From Octopus sinensis (lineage: Eukaryota), in the NCBI RefSeq assembly GCF_006345805.1, contig NW_021833043.1:23039-87038 (forward strand): a stretch of 64,000 bases of DNA, in the 5' to 3' direction. Shown here piece after piece: positions 636 to 64,000 of the stretch. The notes under the pieces are model-generated. The model did no database searches, was not told the DNA's origin, and worked only from the letters and a program-made list of their open reading frames with translations. Within the stretch, counting starts at the first letter, position 1, and the number at the start of each line of letters is the position of its first letter. Position numbers and translations under genes: made by a program.

Positions 636-829
636 TCAGTCGACATCGACGATGACCTCGACATAATTTACTGGGAAGTACCCAGTCTGGCCTCGGATGC
701 TACCTTCAAACCAGTTGTCATCTACTTTCTGTATTAGGTCGATGATGTCCCCTTCGGAGAATCCCAGCTCGCCTTCATTCTCTGGCTCAAAGTCGTACAT
801 TGCCTTGCAGCATGGCTTCGGCTTGGTCA
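636..829 (-). CDS. EndoA: Endophilin-A terminal coding exon (SH3 domain + stop)
   Basis: Acceptor ttgttttccag|TG at 829 (phase 1). Translates (V)[63 protein letters not shown] with TGA at 636-638. This is a classic endophilin SH3 (ALYDF..ENEGEL.F..GD.I...DDNW.EG...G.FP.NYV). Confidence 0.96.
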
Positions 830-3726: not shown

Positions 3727-3902
3727 CTGATTCGCCTAGAGAAGCTGTGCTAGGGAAGTTGTAACCACCACCCGAGCTGCTGGATGTAGCATCTCCGAAA
3801 CCGTCATCATCGTTGAACGGAGATGGGGAGGCACTCCGACGGAAGGAAGTTACACGTTTTACAACATGGTCAGATTTTGGACGACTGACAGCATCTTCCC
3901 TC
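3727..3902 (-). CDS. EndoA: Endophilin-A exon: end of BAR domain + Ser/Gly-rich linker
   Basis: Acceptor tttctttacag|G, donor TCAG|gtaagt. 176 nt, phase 2 in and phase 1 out, matching both neighbours. REDAVSRPKSDHVVKRVTSFRRSASPSPFNDDDGFGDATSSSSGGGYNFPSTASLGES. Confidence 0.93.
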
Positions 3903-7081: not shown

Positions 7082-7185
7082 TTGTAGTCAAGTGTCTCAC
7101 AAAGTCGCTCAAGAATTGAGGCAGACTGTTTATGGTAGTTTGTTATAGCCTCCACGAAAGCTTGCAACTGGGAGATTTGCTCCAC
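7082..7185 (-). CDS. EndoA: Endophilin-A BAR helix 3 exon
   Basis: Acceptor ttattgttacag|GTG, donor CAA|gtaagt. 104 nt. VEQISQLQAFVEAITNYHKQSASILERLCETLDY(K) aligns with the vertebrate endophilin segment [20 protein letters not shown]. Not in the ORF track. Confidence 0.95.
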
Positions 7186-8164: not shown

Positions 8165-8265
8165 ATCATTATCAAGTAAATTAAACATAGCTGTCTCTGT
8201 GATAGCTTTGGTTTCTTCAAACTTTTCCTCGGCTGTTTTCAATTCATCATCAGCAATACCAGAGC
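8165..8265 (-). CDS. EndoA: Endophilin-A BAR domain exon (distal tip into helix 3)
   Basis: Acceptor tgtcttctccag|GC (phase 1), donor GAT|gtaagt. 101 nt. (G)SGIADDELKTAEEKFEETKAITETAMFNLLDND aligns with the endophilin segment DEE...A.EKF.ESK.....MFNLL..D. Confidence 0.95.
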
Positions 8266-20929: not shown

Positions 20930-21677
20930 TAATGGTTTCAAATTTTGACACAATGCCAGCAATGTTACCATCAGTTTCACATGGACTATTACACTTCACA
21001 ATATTCTTTTCTGTTCTAGGCACAAGGCCCGAAATCTTTGGGGAGGGGGGCCAGTCGATTAGATCAACCCTAGTACTGAACTAGGACTTAATTTACCAAG
21101 CCCAAAAGGATGAAAGGCAAAGTCAACCTCGGCAGAATTTGAACTCAGAATGTACGAATGATTCTGTCAGCTTGCTACCTTAATAATTATAATCCTTTCT
21201 ACTTTAGGCACAAGGAGTGAAATTGGTGGGGGAGGGCTACTCAATTACATCAACTCCATTAATCAATGGGTACTTGTTTTATTGACCCCGAAAGAATGAA
21301 TAAAGGTAAAGTCGACTTTGGCAGAATTTGAACTCAGAACCTAAAGATAGACAAAATAGTGCTAAACATTTTGCCAAGCATGCTAACAACTCTGCCAGCT
21401 CGCTACCTTAATAATAATGATGGCGATGGTGGTGGTGGTGGTGATGATGGTGGTGGTGGTGGCGGTGATGGTGATGATGAGGGTTTCAAATTTTGGCAAA
21501 AGACCAGCAATTTCGGGAGAGTGGGGTTAAGCTGATTACATCAACCCCAGAGCTCAACCCTGAAAGGATAAAAGGCAAAGTCGACCTCAGCGGAACTTGA
21601 ACTCAGAACGTAAGGATGGATGAAATGCCGCTAAGCAGTTCAACCGGTGTGCCAACGATTTTACCAGCTCGCTGCCT

Positions 21678-36790: not shown

Positions 36791-38862
36791 GTATATATGG
36801 TAGATGTAGAGCAGATGTAAGAGATATATATGTTATGTATATACAAAAGAATGAGATGAAATAAGATGGAACAAACCTGGAGAGAGTCCTGGTGAGACTT
36901 GATTAGGAAAAGAAGAGAAAGAAATGATCGTTTATTGATGGCTTATTTATACATGCATGCACACACACACACACATATACACACATATGCATACATATGT
37001 AGAAATGTATATATGCATGTATATACATAAACACACACACGTGTGCGCGCGCGTGTATATGTGTGTGTGTGTGTGTAATTCATGAACAGCAACAATAAAT
37101 GGCAATATACATTCATGGCATTGCAAGGAAATCTTCATAAACAGTTATTTAGCAATTGTCAAAGAACCAGCAATTTACGATGCTCATGTGAAAGAATGAA
37201 TATTATTATGATAGTGATGATGATAATATTAATGATAATAATAATAATAATAACAATGGCAAATAATGATTCAGTTTGTTTTTGTTTTTCTTTTGTTTAT
37301 CTTTTCGTTTACCATAGGCACAAGGTGACAAATTAGTAGGTACAGGAATTAGTTGACTATCGAACCTCTAGTACTAAACTTGTATTTTATTTAACACCAC
37401 CTGCCTTTTCACCAGATGAATGACATGAAAAGTTGACCTTCACAAGATCTGGATTGTAAAGTGTTGAGTTTGAATACTGTAATGTGTTTGATCCCACGCA
37501 AATGACTTTGACAATTCTCAGCCCTCACTATTAACAATAATGGTCCCTAATATAGGCACATGGTTACAAATATGGAAGCATAGGACATGGTTAATTGTAC
37601 AATTCCAGTACTTGACTGGTACTTTATCAACCCCAGGGAAGATGAAAGGCAAATTTGACCTCAGCATGATTTGAACTCGGAGCTACAAGATTACAAATAT
37701 GGAGGCAGAAGGTGTTGTCAATTATACCAACTCTAGGTGTTTTAAGGTAAGTAACTAAATACTGCACATCATTTTATATATTGCTGTATTCTTTCTGCAA
37801 TAATGAAGGTCACCAACTTCGGTAAAAATGACATACATTTTTACAGAAAATGCATGTGACAATTTAAATTAACCCCAATTAAGTGTATGAAAGATCTTTA
37901 TTTTAGCCTCCATGGATGGCTGAAAAAGCAAATTTTCAGTCTACACAGAAATATACATGAAAAAGATTCAGTAGATCTATTTAACATCCTAGTATATGAC
38001 CAGGGTTTTATTTTACTGATCCTGGTAGAATGAAAAACAAGGACAATTGAAGTGGGGTTTAAAAGCAGAAAGGAAAACAATCAGACCCATACACCACAAG
38101 GCATTTTGTCTCACACTGGAAAAAACCTGCCAATTCAAAGCCATTGGTTCATCAGTGATGTTAACAGCTCTTTCTAATTTTGGCACAAGCTAGCAATTTT
38201 GAGGGGATAGCAAAGTCAATTACTCTGAGCCTAGTACTTGACCTGTTCTTTATTTTATCAACCCCCAAAAGGATGAAATGCAAAGCTGACCTCAATCGCA
38301 TTTGAACTCAGAAATGCCACTAAGCGTTTGGTTCGGTGCAGTAACAATTTTACCAACTCACTGTCTTAATGAAGCTATTAATAATAAAATGTTCTTCGAT
38401 TTCTTACAGAAACATAACATGGTAGAAGGGTGGGTTGCAACATGACTGGTGTAATCTCCAAGAGAAGAGACCATGATAGATTACTACAGAGAATACTTTT
38501 AATAAATGAGAAATCACACATGCAAATATTAATCCTACCAATTCATCACACATTACAGAAATGACAAAGGACCGAGGTACCTAGCACATTGCTGTACTCA
38601 AGTGGACCCATCTGCCAATACAGAACTGATTTCGGTGCTGGGACCACATAAAAAGCACCCAGTACACTTTGTGGAGTGGTTGGCATTGGGAAGGGCATCC
38701 AGCTGTAGAAACAAACCATGCCACAACAGACGATGGAGCCTGTTTCAGCCCCTGGCCTTACCAGATACGGTCAAACCGTCCAACCCATGGTAGTATGGGA
38801 AACAGACATTAAATGATGATGATGATATCATTATATGAGTGTTCATACATACATACATACAT

Positions 38863-40100: not shown

Positions 40101-42281
40101 TGTGATAATGTTTACTATTCTACACAAGTTTTACAGCTACAATACTACTACTACAACTACTACTGGTGATAATGATTTTTCGTTCATTTATTTTTGCATC
40201 TGCAATTTCCATGCTTGCATGGGTTAGATGAGTATGTTACCAAGTCAGTGTTTTACAACGGGATGCTCTTCCTGTCACTTACCCTAACCTGTTCCCTGAA
40301 TAAACGGATGTCTACTTCAAACACAAAATGCAGGCAGAGGATTAGTTGAAGGCAGAAATGACAACACCATTACTGCTTGCAACTCAGTGACCTAAAGAGA
40401 AGCACAAGTGTAAACCATATGTACACATTGCCAACCCCGAAAGGATGATAGACAAAGTCGACCTCAGCGGAATTTGAACTCAGGACATAGAAGACGGATG
40501 AAATACCACTAAACATTTTACCCGGAATTATCTTTCATGACTTCACTCCAAGCCCTATATTTCTGGGTTTCCAAGAGTGGCTGGAGGATTGGAGGAGAGG
40601 GAGAGAAGGAAAGAAATCACTCTCAGGCTAATGAATGGACCTCCTTTAAGTCACAAATGACCATGGGATTGCACCTAGAAAGTTCCCTCCAAGGCACAAA
40701 TCAAGACAAGGTGATTTATGGAAGACTGGCAGTCGCCCATGCATACCAGCCTCCCCTCTGAATGCCAACAATATTATCCAAGTGAAAGGCAAAGGGGTCG
40801 ATACAGCTTGGCACCAGTGACATTGCAACTCATTTCTACAGCTGAGTGAACTGGATCAACATGAAATAAAGTGTCTTGCTCAAGAACACATTATAATAAT
40901 AATCATAAAGGCACACGGCCTGAAATTTGGTGGGAGGGGACTAGCTGATTACATTGACCCCAGAACACAACTGGTACTTAATTTACCAATCCTGAAAGGA
41001 TGAAAGGCAAAGTTGACCTTGGCAGGATTTGAATTCGGAACACAGCGATGGGCGAAACACTGTTAAGCATTTCATCCAGAATGCTAACAACTCTGATGGC
41101 TCCATTACCTCGATAATAATAATAATCCTTTCTACTATAGGCACAAGGCCTGAAGTTTTGGGGGAGGGGGCCAGTCGATTCGATCGACCCCAGTATGCAA
41201 CTGGTACTTAATTTCTCGACTCCGAAAGGATGAAAGGCAAAGTCGACCTCAGCGGAATTTGAACTCAGAACGTAATGACGGCGAAATACTGTTAAGCATG
41301 CTAACAATTTTGCCGGCTCACCGCCTTGATAATAATAATAATAATAATAATGAAATATTATTTCTAATTTTGGTACAAGAGTAGCAATTTTGAGGAGAAG
41401 GGCCAAGTTGGTTACATGGTCTCCTCAGTACTTTGGCTAATTGTTTTAGGTGCTACTATAACTGGGAGCAAACATAGACATTCTCTCTTTTGGTTCTCCC
41501 ACATTTGGTCCCTATGTTGCAATGGAACATTCAGGATCTGGCAGCTGGAGTGAGAAAGAGAGAGAGAGACCAGCAGTCAGTGGCTGCTCATTTCCAGCTG
41601 AGTGAATTGGAGTAATGTGAAATGATGAATCTTGCTCTCAAGGGCACAAAAACACTACCCTGTCGAAGAACTGAACCCACGACATTATGACGATGAGGTC
41701 AACAGCCTAAATCACAAGGCCACATGCCTCCTCATTGAAGCAGTCAAGAGATATTGAGAGCTGGTTCCTCTGGTCACTTCTTTGTAAAGACAGCAGAGAA
41801 GCTATGGAGGGAGATAAAACCAGGATATAAAGCAGGGTACATGAATAACTAGAGGGGAAGAGGCGTTTGTGGATTTTCATTAGGGGCCTTGATGGCGCTA
41901 AGTTTAGAGTCTTCATAGGGACATCCGCAGGCAAAGATCACTGCTTCAGTCGAGCAAGAAGAAAATATCTACAGCAGAGTGAACAGGAGAGAGAAAGAGA
42001 GCATAATGTACAGTGTGTGTGTGCATGTGTAGTGTGTGTGTGGCTTTGTATACAGATGAGTGAGTGCATGTATATACATGGTAATATGATGCGCTTGAAT
42101 GTGTGTGTATGTGTGTACATGTGTATGTGTATTCAGACAAGCTTTGTTTAACTTGGTCTCTGTGTGTGTGTATGCATGCATATACACATCTATACTTCTA
42201 CATCTACATATATATATATAATATAAATATATATGTTTATATAAATATAAATATATATGTTTATATAAATATAAATGTGTA

Positions 42282-46059: not shown

Positions 46060-46960
46060 AATTAAGTACCAGTACACAACTGGTACTTAATTTATCGACC
46101 CCGAAAGGATGAAAGGCAAAGCTGACCTCGGTGGAATTTGAACTCAGAACGTAATGACAGACGAAATACCTATTTCTTATTTCTTTATTACCCACAAGGG
46201 GCTAAACATAGAGGGGACAAACAAGGACAGACATAGGTATTAAGTCGATTACATCGACCCCAGTGCGTAACTGGTGCTTAATTTATCGACCCCGAAAGGA
46301 TGAAAGGCAAAGCTGACCTTGGTGGAATTTGAACTCAGAAAGTAATGACAGACGAAATACCTATTTCTTATTTCTTTATTACCCACAAGGGGCTAAACAT
46401 AGAGGGGACAAACAAGGACAGACATAGGTATTAAGTCGATTACATCGACCCCAGTGCGTAACTGGTGCTTAATTTATCGACCCCAAAAGGATGAAAGGCA
46501 AAGCTGACCTCGGTGGAATTTGAACTCAGAACGTAATGACAGACGAAATACCGCCAAGCATTTCTCCCAGCGTGCTAACGTTTCTGCCAGCCCGCCTTCA
46601 CTGGTGCTTAATTCATCAACCTCGAAAGGATAAAAGGCAAAGGTGACCTCGACGGAATTTGAACCCAGAACGTAGCGACGGGCAAAATACTGCTAAGCAT
46701 TTTGTCCAGCATGCTAACAATTCTGCCAGCTCACCACAGCCTTTAATAATAACAATAATGGTTTCAAGTTTTTGGCACAAGGCCAGCAATATCAGGGCAA
46801 GGGTTAAGTTGATTTCATTGAGCCCAGTATTGAACTGGTACTTATTTTTTCAGCCCCGAAAGGATGAAAGGCAAAGTCGGCCTTCATGGAATTTGAACAC
46901 AGAATTAAAGGCTAAGCATTTTGCCCAGCATGCTAACAAGTCAACTAGTTCACCACCTTA
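46060..46960 (-). mobile_element. SINE family A cluster including a 191-bp tandem self-nested variant
   Basis: acgaaatac recurs at 46161, 46352 and 46543. The same composite occurs at ~57100-57400. Confidence 0.85.
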
Positions 46961-53342: not shown

Positions 53343-53414
53343 CAGCCCTCATCCTGGAGGGACTCTTCAGAGGACTGCCTTGTGCCTGGTCACCAAAACC
53401 CTGGTCTCCTGCGG
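53343..53414 (-). CDS. Candidate 72-nt phase-1 symmetric cassette exon, probably of endophilin-A
   Basis: ccctctcttaaacag|CC...GCTG|gtaagc. Open in phase 1: (A)AGDQGFGDQAQGSPLKSPSRMRA(G). GC-rich unique island in repeat DNA, paralogous to 56665-56748. Confidence 0.68.
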
Positions 53415-54027
53415 CTGTTTAAGAGAGGGGCCGCACCAGCGGAAAATGCATTATCATCATCATCATCATCATTATTATAACAGACAGAGACAGGAAAGAG
53501 AGTAAAAGGAAAGGAACAGGAAAAAGGAAACAAAAAGCGAGAAAGACAGACAGACAAAAGTAGAGGAAGGAAGGAAAAGCAAGAAAAAAGGAGAAAGAAA
53601 GAAAGAAGGAAAGAAACAGGGTGAAAGAAGGAAAAAAGGAGAAAGAAAGAAAAGGAAGGAAGGAAGAAAGAAAGAGAGAGAAGGAAAGGAGGAAAGAAAA
53701 GCAGGAAGGCACACAACAATGAAGAAAGCAAGGAAGAGAGAAAGAGTGAAAGACAGAATTAAATGAAGGCATAAAAGGAAGAAAGAATGAATGAATGAGA
53801 GAGAGAGAAACTGACCTGTGTGTGTGTGTGTGTGTATGTCAATGTCAGTATGTATACATCTATGTATGTGTATATGAATGGATAGCTGGGTGTGTGTATA
53901 TGTGTGTGAGTGCGTGTGTGCTTGAATTGTATATATATATATTTTTTACATGTGCAATATGTGAGGGTGTGCCAATGCAGGTGGGTGTGAGGGTGTGTGT
54001 GAATATGTGTGTGTATATATATATATA

Positions 54028-54078
<51 letters not shown>

Positions 54079-55899
54079 GTGTGTGTGTATGCAAGTGTGT
54101 ACATAAACACACCTTTGCCAGGTATGTTTGTGATTTTGCAAGTGATGAATAACATTAATTCACTCCAAAGTGGAGGCAGGTGGAAAGAAATATAAGGTTG
54201 TAATAATCAAAAACAGTAATTAATGTAATGTATTAACTACTACACTACACATAAAATTTACAGGTGTAACATGTATAATCAGGCCATACCAAGGTTTCAC
54301 ATGGAAAACTCAACGGTATGACACTGATATTTATAGATGGCAATTAAGATGCTGATAAGAAACACAATATGGATTTAATCCTCAAATTTCCTACACACAT
54401 ACACATATATATACATAGTTATACATGTACATATGTATTTTGGTATACGCATACAAACATATATGTACACATACATACAAAATATATTTACATATATTTA
54501 CAAATACATGTAGATACAGTCACAAAAATTACAAGAAAATACGTGTACAAAGTACAAGTATACGTAGCCAGACAGATACATACACACAAAAAAAAAACAT
54601 GTACATATAAACATACAAATATAATAGATACCTACATGAATATATAGATATATGCACAGATATGGATACATATATACATATATACATAATTATATGCAGA
54701 AGAAAAATTTAGAAAAGAAATAACAGAGAAGATAAAATGTGACCCATTAAAATCATATTGGTATGCAATATATATATTTATGTGCATTTAAGAGTATGTA
54801 TATGTATATATACTACTTTCTCAGTTATACAACTAAAGCCTCTAATTACATGACTGAAAGTTGTCAGGGTCTCCTTGGTGTTGTGATTTTCAAGATTCTC
54901 CAGCAATAAGAAGACTTGTGGGTCAATTCCTGCAGGAAATTTTCATCTACTTTCTTTTCCATCTAAAGGGTATTTTTATCTGATATTATGAGCTATTATT
55001 TAGCACTTCATTTCAGTAGAATCTCACAAAGTCTAATACTTTAATTTCTCAGAGCTTCAAATGAATCCAAATGTGTGTGTGTGGATGGAGAGGAGGAGTG
55101 CGACGTCCACTTCCCAACCACGGGGTTTCAAGTTGTAGCACCTTGGGCAAATGTCATCTACGCAGAAGCCCCAGACTGACCACAGCCTGGGGACCAGGTT
55201 TGGTAGACAGAAACTGTCTTATATGTATGTATGTGTGTGTGAGTGCATGCACATGTTTGTGTGTATGTGTTTGTCTTCTTGCATTGACATTGTATGATAG
55301 TTGTAAGCGAGCATCATCATCATCATCATACAAGTGGTACCAATCATTCCAAATCTTCCATGGAAACACTCCAAGCTAAGTGGGAACATTCACTGGCTTG
55401 GAAACAGGTGGTGGATCACTGAGGTACGGAAGAACCTGCCTTGCCTAATCCTTTCACAGCTGTATAAGAACGGAAAAATGTACATTGACCATCCTGGTCC
55501 TGCATTAGTTGTGTTCAGTTGACCTGCTCAAAAACAGCCATTCTTTGATAACCATAGCAGTAGATCACAGGCCAGCTCTTGTTAAACCCACTGGTAATGT
55601 CCCACATAGCATAAGTACCTTTGCCTTATGATGTTGGGAACAGGCAGGAAATCTCCATACAGCCGTTTCTTGATTCCATACAGTTGTTTAAGGATGAGGA
55701 AAAACTGAAGGCTACTAGGGGAGATATATATATATTTTTTTTTTATCTAGTTTCATCTCATGAGCTGAGGCCATGCTGGGGCACCGCCATTGAAAAAGTG
55801 TGTAAGACAGCGCCAGTGGTTTCAAGGTAGGAAATCTTCGATGAGAGTTCAGAGTGAGCGAAGTAACCACGCGGCTAAGCCCACATCATTTGCATTATT

Positions 55900-56166
55900 T
55901 ACATTATTTACATTTGATGAATATTTGTCCTCATTCTTGTTTGTTGTTACAACAACGTTTCGGCTGATAGGCAGTGACCTGAATAATAATGATAATAATA
56001 ATAATATTAATAATATTAATAACATTGAAAAATACCTTGGTAATGAGAACCCAGGTTCGAAATTTCCCCCAAGACACCTGATGAAGGCTGGAGGGTGTCT
56101 CAGCCGAAACATTGTGTTAACAACTAACAAGATGAGGACAAATATCCATCAAATGTAAATAATGTA
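55900..56166. mobile_element. Inverted Penelope-like terminal-repeat pair
   Basis: 55900-55967 is inverted at 56100-56166. The right part contains the ctgatgaaggc...gccgaaac motif typical of Penelope pLTRs. Confidence 0.65.
56073..56118 (+). ncRNA. Hammerhead-like motif in a Penelope-like terminal repeat
   Basis: GACAC-CUGAUGA-A-GGCUG(gagggugucu)CAGCC-GAAA-CA-UU/GUGUU. The inverted partial copy at ~55950-55967 retains gaaacgtt, so this copy has lost the CG of stem III. Confidence 0.55.
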
Positions 56167-56664
56167 CATAATTCTTCATCTCTTAAATATAGAACTATAT
56201 TAGTGGAGATATGTTATCCACTACCACAACACAAGGAAACATTGTCAGTGATCAGTCTCAGTACTGCGTGGTTTGTCCAGTAGGTCCAAGACATTGTCAA
56301 ATATGACTCCCAATGAATTGTCAAAGGCCATCAATGCACAGCTCATGTAACTGAAAACAAATTCGTTAAAATGCCAGACCCTTTTTGTGACTTTTGGCCT
56401 GTCTTATGGGATGAGTTCTCCAAGATGTGTTTAAGACTGCTTTTAACATTCAAGTGTAAGGAGGGGAATAAAACAACAAATACATCTAGTTCTCTACAAA
56501 CAACTACGCCTATTTGGAGGTTATGTGAAAGTGCACTCAGCCAAATGAGATCAGAATGGGAAACATATAATGGGTTTTGTTGGGGGGGTTTTTTCCGCCC
56601 CCAGTGGTTGGGGGGGAGAGTGCAATTCTGCAGTGCTTTTTGCAGTGCTTTTGCAGGATCTTAC

Positions 56665-56748
56665 CAGGCCTCATTCGTGTGGGACTTCGCGATGGGCTAC
56701 TGGTGGCGGACGAAAAATCTCCGAAATCACCGATACCGTCGACTACAA
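56665..56748 (-). CDS. Candidate 84-nt phase-1 symmetric cassette exon, probably of endophilin-A
   Basis: ttttattttcttcctgtcacattgtgacaccag|TT...CCTG|gtaaga. (V)VVDGIGDFGDFSSATSSPSRSPTRMRP(G). A second in-frame AG 6 nt downstream would give 78 nt (start 56742). Confidence 0.68.
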
Positions 56749-56939: not shown

Positions 56940-56999
56940 TGGTCAGTATGCTACTGGTTATGACGAATAACAAGTTAAAATGTTACCATCAGTTTCACA

Positions 57000-57655
57000 T
57001 GGACAATTACACTTGGCAATATTCTTTTCTTTTCTAGATACAGAGCTCCAAGTTTTTAGGAATGGGGCCAGTCGATTAGATTGACTCTAGTACTTGACTG
57101 GTACTTAATTTCTCAACCCCAAAAGGATGAAAGTCAAAGTTCCTCGGCGGAATCTGAACTCAGAACATAAAGACAGATGAAATACCTATTTCTTTATTAC
57201 CCACAAGGGGCTAAACATAGAGGGGACAAACAAGGACAGACATAGGTATTAAGTCGATTACATCGACCCCAGTGCGTAACTGGTACTTAATTTATCGACC
57301 CCGAAAGGATGAAAGGTAAAGTCGAACTCGGCGGAATTTGAACTCACAACGTAACGGCAGACGAAATACCGCTAAGCATTTCGCCAGTCTTTCTAACATT
57401 TCTGTCAACTCGCTGCCTTACACTCGGCAATATTCCTTTCTACTCGAGGCAGCAGGGCCTGAACTTTTGGGGAAGGAGGCCAGTCGATTAAATCGACTCC
57501 AGTATGCAACTGGTACTTAATTTATCGATCCCGAAAGGACGAAATGCAAAGTCAACTTCGGCGGAATTTGAACTCAGAACATAAAGATAGAGGAAATACT
57601 GCTAAGCATTTCGCCCGCCGTCATAACGATTCTACCAGCTCACCGCCTTACACTT
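57000..57655 (-). mobile_element. SINE family A cluster
   Basis: Same consensus, including one nested variant. Confidence 0.85.
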
Positions 57656-63992: not shown

Positions 63993-64000
63993 AAATGAGG

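What the first reader, a model, noticed from the sequence alone, without database searches (positions are those of the whole stretch)
53343..56748. Pair of paralogous, frame-preserving cassette exons upstream of the endophilin BAR-tip exon
Seen: two GC-rich islands 3.3 kb apart on the gene strand, each with a good acceptor, a G|gtaag donor, a length divisible by 3 (84 and 72 nt) and phase 1/1. Their peptides align: VVDGIGDFGDFSSATSSPSRSPTRMRP versus AGDQGFGDQAQGSPLKSPSRMRA. The next confirmed exon (8165-8265) starts in phase 1, so either can splice in frame. Known: duplicated symmetric exons often form mutually exclusive pairs, and vertebrate endophilin-B1 has neuron-specific inserts between BAR helices 2 and 3. 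Inference: an undescribed isoform switch that puts a disordered, phosphorylatable loop into a cephalopod endophilin-A.
Basis: partly seen in the sequence, partly recalled or inferred. Interest (0 to 1): 0.8.

Follow-up and report, generated by a model that had tools for sequence, protein, structure and literature searches.

The report
Annotated alternative exons in octopus endophilin-A
The two exon-like islands are real, related coding exons of the octopus endophilin-A gene that add a floppy, probably phosphorylatable loop at the tip of its membrane-bending domain. They are already in public gene models, a third 21-base exon lies between them and the next exon, and they are used in combinations rather than one-or-the-other.

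Summary
Exon A (56748-56665, 84 nt) and exon B (53414-53343, 72 nt) lie on the minus strand, have AG/GTAAG borders, are phase 1/1, and encode the peptides quoted.

They are reciprocal best hits in the six-frame translation of the whole window. Synonymous sites are saturated while the amino acids are kept, so both are old duplicates under coding constraint.

They are not new. The window is Octopus sinensis scaffold VCDQ01003025.1. The RefSeq 'endophilin-A3' model is rebuilt exactly by splicing A(3' end)-B-C-8265... from the window.

O. vulgaris models, whose isoforms were annotated from Iso-Seq and RNA-seq, give A+B+C, A+C, B+C and B alone. So A and B are independent cassettes, not a mutually exclusive pair.

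Cuttlefish and another decapodiform transcript carry one A/B-type exon (GEPAFGDQSAQSSPSRSPSRMRA). The module is therefore coleoid-wide.

The insert sits at residue ~178 of endophilin-A1, in the helix 2-3 tip loop, right after the KRRKKEK patch. It is predicted disordered and carries tandem S-P-x-[K/R] sites. A phospho-switch role is inferred, not shown. The same intron position varies in annotated isoforms of insects, other molluscs and amphioxus.

The parts
56665..56748 (-). Cassette exon A, 84 nt, phase 1/1. It encodes (V)VVDGIGDFGDFSSATSSPSRSPTRMRP(G) and has two S-P-x-R sites. The RefSeq O. sinensis CDS starts at the ATG at 56674-56672 inside it.
   Evidence: Sequence. Present in O. vulgaris P0009 and P0010, and skipped in P0006, P0007 and P0014. 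The A-to-B junction is in RefSeq P0012/P0013. It matches O. bimaculoides at 79/84 nt, with 3 nonsynonymous changes in the N-terminal half.
53343..53414 (-). Cassette exon B, 72 nt, phase 1/1. It encodes (A)AGDQGFGDQAQGSPLKSPSRMRA(G), with SPLK and SPSR sites. A second AG lies 6 nt inside the exon.
   Evidence: Sequence. Present in O. vulgaris P0006, P0007, P0009 and P0014, in Argonauta hians P0008, and in O. sinensis and O. bimaculoides RefSeq. Skipped in P0010. It matches O. bimaculoides at 71/72 nt, and the one change is synonymous. It is the copy closest to the cuttlefish exon (pN 0.14, pS 0.84).
36877..36897 (-). Microexon C, 21 nt, phase 1/1: caag|TCTCACCAGGACTCTCTCCAG|gtttgt. It encodes (V)SPGLSP(G).
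   Evidence: Located. Needed to rebuild RefSeq P0012. Identical at 21/21 nt in O. bimaculoides. Present in Argonauta, cuttlefish and other decapodiform transcripts. Skipped in P0006 and P0143.
8165..8265 (-). Constitutive exon encoding the start of BAR helix 3 (GSGIADDELKTAEEKFEETKAITETAMFNLLDND). It enters in phase 1.
   Evidence: tblastn with human SH3GL2, sequence and the splice check.
7082..7185 (-). Constitutive exon encoding the rest of BAR helix 3 (VEQISQLQAFVEAITNYHKQSASILERLCETLDYK).
3727..3902 (-). Linker exon between the BAR and SH3 domains (REDAVSRPKSDHVVKRVTSFRRSASPSPFNDDDGFGDATSSSSGGGYNFPSTASLGES). It ends in phase 1.
   Evidence: It has a weak similarity to exon B (Smith-Waterman score 33).
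636..829 (-). SH3-domain exon with the stop codon (TGA at 638-636).

Best explanation
Exons A, B and C are three alternatively included, frame-preserving exons of the Octopus sinensis endophilin-A gene (RefSeq name 'endophilin-A3'). They lie in the intron of more than 55 kb between the exon that ends BAR helix 2 (...RRLDYDCKRRKKEK, off the scaffold end) and the exon that starts helix 3 (8265-8165).

All three enter and leave in phase 1, and each ends in G. Any subset therefore keeps the frame and restores the Gly before SGIADDEL. Annotated transcripts use them in combinations: A+B+C, A+C, B+C, B alone, and in decapodiforms C alone or none.

A and B are old tandem duplicates of one coleoid exon. 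B is the conservative copy and A the divergent one.

Together they add up to 59 residues at the distal tip of the BAR dimer, directly after the polybasic KRRKKEK patch. The insert is predicted disordered, acidic and aromatic at its N-terminal side, and rich in S-P-x-[K/R] at its C-terminal side.

Inferred, not shown: exon choice sets how many proline-directed kinase sites (none, or 2 to 6 in the annotated combinations) sit next to the membrane-contacting tip. Phosphorylation there would weaken or retune membrane binding or lattice contacts, as known phosphorylations in H0 and H1I of endophilin-A1 do.
For: Gene identity:
- tblastn with human SH3GL2 finds the helix-3 and SH3 exons.
- The full-length relatives carry Pfam BAR and SH3 hits.

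Exon reality and joins:
- An exact rebuild of RefSeq XP_029656021/22 from window exons.
- The window equals the reverse complement of L008, which is scaffold VCDQ01003025.1.

Alternative use:
- Five O. vulgaris isoforms, CAI9733751-55.
- Their alternative forms were annotated by PASA from Iso-Seq and RNA-seq (PMC10700109).
- Decapodiform transcripts exist with the A/B-type exon + C, with C only, and with none.
- The cuttlefish assignment rests on 272/272 identity to Acanthosepion pharaonis SH3GL.

Paralogy and constraint:
- Reciprocal best hit, Smith-Waterman score 55 against 33.
- 7 of the 11 identical residues use different codons.
- pS 0.8-0.9 against pN 0.14-0.35 among A, B and the decapodiform exons.

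Position:
- P0009 residues 2-161 align to 1ZWW residues 18-178, and residues 223-299 to 178-254.

Disorder:
- In the AlphaFold2 model, pLDDT is below 50 for residues 167-220, between helices 92-165 and 225-251.

Motifs:
- SPSR and SPTR in A, SPLK and SPSR in B, SPSR twice in the cuttlefish exon.
- [ST]-P-x-[KR] as the CDK consensus is my own knowledge.
- Phospho-regulation of EndoA1 at Thr14, Thr73 and Ser75 is described in PMC12457278.
Against: - No read-level expression data were available. Inclusion levels, tissue specificity and co-occurrence frequencies are unknown, and the isoforms are pipeline models.
- No annotated Octopus isoform lacks all three exons, so in Octopus B and C may be nearly constitutive.
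- Exon A's N-terminal half is not well conserved even between two Octopus species (DFGDF becomes DFGGY).
- At that short distance exon A (94%) is no better conserved than aligned intron (mean 87%, sd 11%).
- Exon A is absent from the single Argonauta model.
- Nothing tested here shows phosphorylation or any effect on membrane binding.
- The pN/pS contrast rests on 22-24 codons aligned by protein similarity.
Confidence: 0.85

Rival explanations
1. A and B form a mutually exclusive pair: each transcript takes exactly one of them.
For: They are homologous, of similar length, adjacent and in the same phase. Some O. vulgaris isoforms carry only one of them: P0010 has A only, and P0006 and P0007 have B only.
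Against: - P0009 (CAI9733754) contains A followed by B.
- The RefSeq models of O. sinensis and O. bimaculoides start in A and continue into B.
- Both exons are multiples of 3, so nothing in the reading frame enforces exclusivity.
- Decapodiform transcripts with no such exon exist (P0143 and the C-only forms).
Confidence: 0.04
2. They are chance pseudo-exons or fragments of a repeat in a long intron, with no coding role.
For: Exon-like segments of this quality arise by chance about 5-10 times per strand of this window. There are 39 GC-rich islands, many of them repeats. The flanks hold microsatellites and a dispersed repeat.
Against: - The exon bodies are single-copy in the window.
- The protein-level similarity is an outlier, it is specific to one frame, and it comes with saturated synonymous sites.
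- The peptides are in annotated proteins of four octopod species and in cuttlefish transcripts.
Confidence: 0.01
3. The exons belong to a separate gene nested in the endophilin intron.
For: The upstream endophilin exons are not in the window. From the window alone, the link upstream cannot be seen.
Against: Full-length O. vulgaris and Argonauta proteins read ...RRLDYDCKRRKKEK-(A)-(B)-(C)-GSGIADDEL... in one chain, with BAR and SH3 domains. No other coding gene was seen around the exons.
Confidence: 0.01
4. The insert is a docking motif rather than a phospho-switch. The acidic-aromatic half (GDFGDF / GFGDQ, compare DDDGFGD in the linker) would bind a partner protein, and exon choice would change partners rather than membrane affinity.
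For: An FGD-type motif recurs in A, B, the cuttlefish exon (AFGDQ) and the constitutive linker exon.
Against: This half is the less conserved one: DFGDF becomes DFGGY in O. bimaculoides, and it reads AFGEHHH in the second decapodiform. No partner is known and nothing here tests binding. This reading does not exclude the phospho-switch.
Confidence: 0.1

Closest known systems
RefSeq and GenBank gene models of cephalopod endophilin-A: O. sinensis XP_029656020-22, O. bimaculoides XP_052829408, O. vulgaris CAI9733751-55, Argonauta hians GAB1605223
   Same: These are the same exons. The O. sinensis model lies on this very scaffold and is rebuilt exactly from the window.
   Different: The O. sinensis and O. 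bimaculoides models are cut at the 5' end and start at a Met inside exon A. None of the models comes with a functional description. In the library searched I found no paper that discusses these isoforms.
Vertebrate endophilin B1 (Bif-1/SH3GLB1) neuron-specific isoforms b, c and e, from alternative exons 6 (39 or 87 bp) and 7 inside the N-BAR domain. The EndoB neural microexon is shared by fly and mouse.
   Same: Adjacent frame-preserving cassette exons inside the BAR domain of an endophilin, used in combinations (none, 7 only, short 6 + 7, long 6 + 7) (PMC10269655; PMC8797185).
   Different: It is a different paralogue (B, not A) and the sequences are unrelated. I did not verify that the insertion point is the same loop. 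Neuron specificity is shown for Bif-1 and not for the octopus exons. The octopus pair is a tandem duplicate, and I have no evidence that Bif-1 exons 6 and 7 are.
Annotated endophilin-A isoforms of insects, other molluscs and amphioxus that differ in the same helix 2-3 loop
   Same: The intron position is the same (after K[RK]R[KRQ]..K, before G..[DE]E[LI]). The inserts are 4-37 residues long. The insect ones are Ser-Pro-rich with one S-P-A-[KR] site, for example ATGKRSVSPHFGSPARLGISSPYTG.
   Different: There is no demonstrable sequence homology to A, B or C. The resemblance may be convergent, and these too are only database models.
Mutually exclusive tandem-duplicated exons
   Same: Tandem duplication of an exon, with the same phase and similar length.
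   Different: A and B occur together in annotated transcripts and can both be skipped, so they behave as independent cassettes.

Membership tests
Endophilin-A (SH3GL) gene | N-BAR domain followed by a variable linker and a C-terminal SH3 domain | tested here: met
   The window exons match human SH3GL2 residues 178-241 and 292-347. The full-length octopus proteins carry PF03114 and SH3 Pfam hits. They match the endophilin-A1/A3 BAR and SH3 structures at E values of 5e-72 to 4e-25.
Cassette (alternatively included) exon | Canonical AG...GT borders and a length divisible by 3 | tested here: met
   A is 84 nt, B 72 nt and C 21 nt, all phase 1/1.
Cassette (alternatively included) exon | Transcripts both with and without the exon | tested here: met
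   In the O. vulgaris models, A is present in P0009 and P0010 and absent in P0006, P0007 and P0014. B is absent in P0010, and C is absent in P0006. The decapodiform transcripts P0135, P0133 and P0143 also differ. This is model and contig level only, with no read counts.
Mutually exclusive exon pair | The two exons are homologous and adjacent | tested here: met
Mutually exclusive exon pair | The two exons are never included together, and exactly one is included | tested here: not met
   P0009 has A+B. RefSeq P0012, P0013 and P0011 carry the A-to-B junction (the last three codons of A joined to B).
Tandem exon duplication under purifying selection | Protein similarity beyond chance, with diverged synonymous sites | tested here: met
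   Smith-Waterman score 55 against 33 for the next best, reached by none of 20000 shuffles. For A against B, pS is 0.89 and pN 0.34. For B against the cuttlefish exon, pS is 0.84 and pN 0.14. The sample is small, 22-24 codons.
Neural microexon (exon C) | Length of 27 nt or less and frame-preserving | tested here: met
   21 nt, phase 1/1.
Neural microexon (exon C) | Inclusion enriched in neurons | not testable with these tools
   No tissue-resolved reads were available.
Phospho-regulated disordered insert | Intrinsic disorder and kinase consensus sites | tested here: met
   pLDDT is below 50 for residues 167-220. Four [ST]-P-x-[KR] sites lie in A+B.
Phospho-regulated disordered insert | Actual phosphorylation with a functional effect | not testable with these tools
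   This needs phosphoproteomics and biochemical assays.

The most novel reading that the evidence does not exclude
The A/B/C exons would be a coleoid-wide, combinatorially dosed phospho-switch at the BAR tip. Exon choice would place 0-6 proline-directed kinase sites beside the polybasic membrane-contact patch, tuning endophilin-A membrane binding or lattice assembly in particular neurons. The Ser-Pro-rich inserts at the same intron position in insect endophilin-A would be the same, so far unstudied, regulatory device, either ancestral to protostomes or repeatedly evolved.
Probability: 0.3. Interest if true: 0.5.

Novelty: already known. Interest (0 to 1): 0.25.

Why it matters
As a discovery it adds little, because the exons are already in RefSeq and GenBank models, including the model on this very scaffold.

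What the check adds:
- A corrected picture: three cassettes used in combinations, not a mutually exclusive pair.
- Evidence that the A/B-type exon is conserved and alternatively used from octopus to cuttlefish.
- Evidence that A and B are an octopod duplication kept under coding constraint.
- The observation that the helix 2-3 tip loop of endophilin-A varies among annotated isoforms across invertebrates.

No paper found in the library searched discusses this. If the tandem S-P-x-[K/R] sites are real kinase targets, the module would be a route for regulating synaptic-vesicle endocytosis that vertebrate endophilin-A lacks.

Tried and rejected
- **Repeat or transposon origin.** blastn of each exon with 400-nt flanks against the window found only microsatellites and one dispersed repeat in the flanks. 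The exon bodies are single-copy. Rejected.
- **DNA-level paralogy.** The only A-B match by blastn is a 15-mer at the donor (E = 11). The similarity becomes visible only at protein and codon level.
- **Exon-likeness as evidence.** Counts on the control strand show that it is not significant alone.
- **First protein search.** The A peptide plus two downstream exons returned only five short fragments and missed the octopus proteins. The word index is incomplete and A-containing isoforms are not cluster representatives, so that negative result meant nothing.
- **Genomic DNA of Argonauta and O. vulgaris.** I wanted to look for exon A there.
- **O. sinensis against O. bimaculoides.** The two are too close to separate exon A from intron.
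- **The extra Val in RefSeq isoform X1 (SPGLSP-V-GSG).** No shift of up to 12 nt at the C donor or the 8265 acceptor reproduces it. It remains unexplained.
- **Logan genomic contigs L001-L006.** These come from a distant cephalopod and cover only exons 8265 and 7185.
Full report
**What is at the coordinates**

On the minus strand, exon A (56748-56665, 84 nt) is bordered by ...caccag| and |gtaaga. Exon B (53414-53343, 72 nt) is bordered by ...aaacag| and |gtaagc. Their GC content is 0.55 and 0.61, against 0.349 for the window.

tblastn with human SH3GL2 places endophilin-A exons downstream on the same strand: 8265-8165 and 7185-7082 (BAR helix 3) and 829-636 (SH3). It finds none upstream. A and B therefore sit in an intron of more than 55 kb whose 5' exon is outside the window.

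**Is it more than chance?**

Exon-likeness is not. With thresholds set at A's and B's own scores, 7 open symmetric phase-1 pseudo-exons occur on the minus strand and 10 on the plus strand. There are 39 GC-rich islands in the window.

The donors are strong, and A's acceptor is weak close to the AG. The exon bodies are single-copy, and by blastn they share only a 15-mer at the donor.

The peptides, however, are reciprocal best hits among 2657 six-frame fragments. Their Smith-Waterman score is 55 against 33 for the next best, and none of 20000 shuffles reached it.

Anchored at the donors, the claimed frame gives 11/23 identical residues, while the other two frames contain stops. Seven of the 11 identical residues use different codons. 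Identity by codon position is 10, 14 and 8 of 23. That is the pattern of an old duplication kept as coding sequence.

**Identity of the locus**

A second protein search, using sense and antisense translations of both exons, hit 'endophilin-A3-like' proteins of Octopus vulgaris and Argonauta hians that contain the B peptide. Their 90% cluster holds further isoforms and the RefSeq proteins of O. sinensis and O. bimaculoides.

Fetching the O. sinensis locus showed that the window is the exact reverse complement of L008 positions 1-64000. That is scaffold VCDQ01003025.1 of GCA_006345805.1, and window position 64000 is the scaffold end. This explains why the upstream exons are missing, and why the RefSeq CDS starts at the Met inside exon A.

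Splicing 56674-56665, 53414-53343, 36897-36877, 8265-8165, 7185-7082, 3902-3727 and 829-636 gives XP_029656021/22 residue for residue.

**A third cassette, and how the exons are used**

| O. vulgaris protein | Accession | Loop content after ...RRLDYDCKRRKKEK |
|---|---|---|
| P0009 | CAI9733754 | A-B-C-GSGIADDEL |
| P0010 | CAI9733752 | A-C |
| P0007 | CAI9733755 | B-C |
| P0014 | CAI9733751 | B-C (different 3' end) |
| P0006 | CAI9733753 | B alone |

 The alternative forms in that annotation were added by PASA from Iso-Seq and RNA-seq (PMC10700109).

A and B thus occur together and separately. They are independent cassettes, not a mutually exclusive pair. All three exons are phase 1/1 and end in G, so every subset keeps the frame and restores Gly before SGIADDEL.

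**Conservation**

- O. bimaculoides differs from the window at 5/84 nt in A. Three changes are nonsynonymous and all five lie in the N-terminal half, so DFGDF becomes DFGGY.
- It differs at 1/72 nt in B (synonymous) and 0/21 nt in C.
- This species pair is too close to be decisive. Aligned intron is 87% identical, sd 11%.
- Argonauta has B and C.

The decisive comparison comes from decapodiform transcript contigs in the cluster of P0016.

| Protein | Source | Loop content |
|---|---|---|
| P0135 | Logan SRR19578102; 272/272 identical to Acanthosepion pharaonis SH3GL | KEK-GEPAFGDQSAQSSPSRSPSRMRA-VSPGLSP-GSG |
| P0138 | JGI metatranscriptome contig | GESAFGEHHHSAQSSPTLRSPSRNRA |
| Most other members | Logan | C only |
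| P0143 | Logan | no insert |

Nei-Gojobori counts give pS 0.8-0.9 (saturated) against the following pN values:
- B against cuttlefish: 0.14
- A against cuttlefish: 0.25
- A against B: 0.34

So the A/B-type exon predates the octopod-decapodiform split and is alternative in both lineages. B is the conservative copy and A the divergent duplicate. The numbers rest on 22-24 codons.

**Where it lands in the protein**

Against PDB 1ZWW (mouse endophilin-A1 BAR), P0009 residues 2-161 align to residues 18-178 and residues 223-299 to 178-254. The 61 extra residues therefore sit at about residue 178, in the helix 2-3 loop at the distal tip.

AlphaFold2 with a 59-sequence alignment gives helices at 92-165 and 225-251, with pLDDT below 50 for residues 167-220. 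The insert follows the polybasic KRRKKEK directly.

A carries SPSR and SPTR, B carries SPLK and SPSR, and the cuttlefish exon carries SPSR twice. C adds two bare SP sites. [ST]-P-x-[KR] is the CDK consensus (my own knowledge). Phosphorylation in H0 and H1I is known to retune endophilin-A1 membrane insertion (PMC12457278). A phospho-switch at the tip is therefore a reasonable inference, but nothing here shows it.

**Context in other animals**

In the 120 best relatives of P0009, the loop between GRRLD[YF]D and AE[ED]KF has a basal length of 19 residues. It varies in annotated isoforms of several groups:
- Bivalves and gastropods have short inserts.
- Hymenoptera have ATGKRSVSPHFGSPARLGISSPYTG.
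- Lepidoptera, a mayfly and an orthopteran also have inserts.
- Amphioxus has micro-variants.

This intron position thus varies among annotated isoforms in many invertebrate groups. Homology of these inserts to A, B or C cannot be shown.

The nearest published analogue is vertebrate endophilin B1, which has neuron-specific exons 6 and 7 inside the N-BAR domain, used in combinations (PMC10269655). A related case is the EndoB microexon shared by fly and mouse (PMC8797185). Literature searches found nothing on endophilin-A isoforms of this kind in cephalopods.

**Verdict**

The features are already annotated, including on this very scaffold. The mutually exclusive idea is contradicted, and a third cassette was missed. 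Tissue specificity and function remain untested.

Noticed in passing
window 36877-36897 (minus strand): A 21-nt microexon C (VSPGLSP) lies between exon B and exon 8265. It is identical in O. bimaculoides and present in Argonauta, cuttlefish and other decapodiform transcripts. It is skipped in O. vulgaris P0006 and decapodiform P0143.
   Followed up: yes
window 36877 / 8265 junction; proteins P0013 and P0015: RefSeq O. sinensis isoform X1 and an old O. bimaculoides model read SPGLSP-V-GSG. No shift of up to 12 nt at the C donor or the 8265 acceptor reproduces the extra Val. Decapodiform transcripts show an SPGLSP-A-GSG variant instead, which fits a tandem acceptor.
   Followed up: partly
window 53408-53414 (minus strand): Exon B has a second AG 6 nt inside it (ccgcag|GAGACC), which would give a 66-nt in-frame version. 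The Argonauta protein is one Ala shorter at this junction.
   Followed up: no
window 3727-3902 (minus strand): The constitutive linker exon carries DDDGFGDATSSSS. This is weakly similar to the GFGD and Ser-rich part of A and B, and is the third-best hit for B in the window (Smith-Waterman score 33). It also ends in phase 1 with G|gtaagt. A common origin is possible but was not shown.
   Followed up: partly
window 64000 (= end of scaffold VCDQ01003025.1): The window ends at the scaffold end. The N-terminal BAR exons are therefore on another scaffold, and the RefSeq model is cut at the 5' end, starting at the Met inside exon A (56674-56672).
   Followed up: yes
L007 (O. bimaculoides CM046615.1), protein P0011: In the O. 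bimaculoides RefSeq protein, an unrelated tail (GVGFYNKTPKNQHLDTPHKTSCRIKLSPFI) replaces the end of the SH3 domain. This is probably an annotation or assembly problem at the last exon.
   Followed up: no
window 56979-57148, with copies at 20961-21133, 57418-57552, 41121-41243 and 46434-46513: A dispersed repeat about 170 nt long (77-83% identical copies) lies just upstream of exon A. Many TA, CA and GGT/ACC microsatellites occur across the window, including next to both exons.
   Followed up: partly
proteins P0081-P0130 (insect endophilin-A isoforms): Annotated insect isoforms carry 10-37-residue Ser-Pro-rich inserts with one S-P-A-[KR] site at the same helix 2-3 loop position as the cephalopod exons. 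Amphioxus shows micro-variants at the same point.
   Followed up: partly
window 7170-7172 (minus strand; codon TCC in VEQISQLQ): O. sinensis and O. bimaculoides have Ser here, while the O. vulgaris models have Thr (VEQITQLQ). This is the only residue that differs between the window-encoded exons and the O. vulgaris proteins.
   Followed up: no
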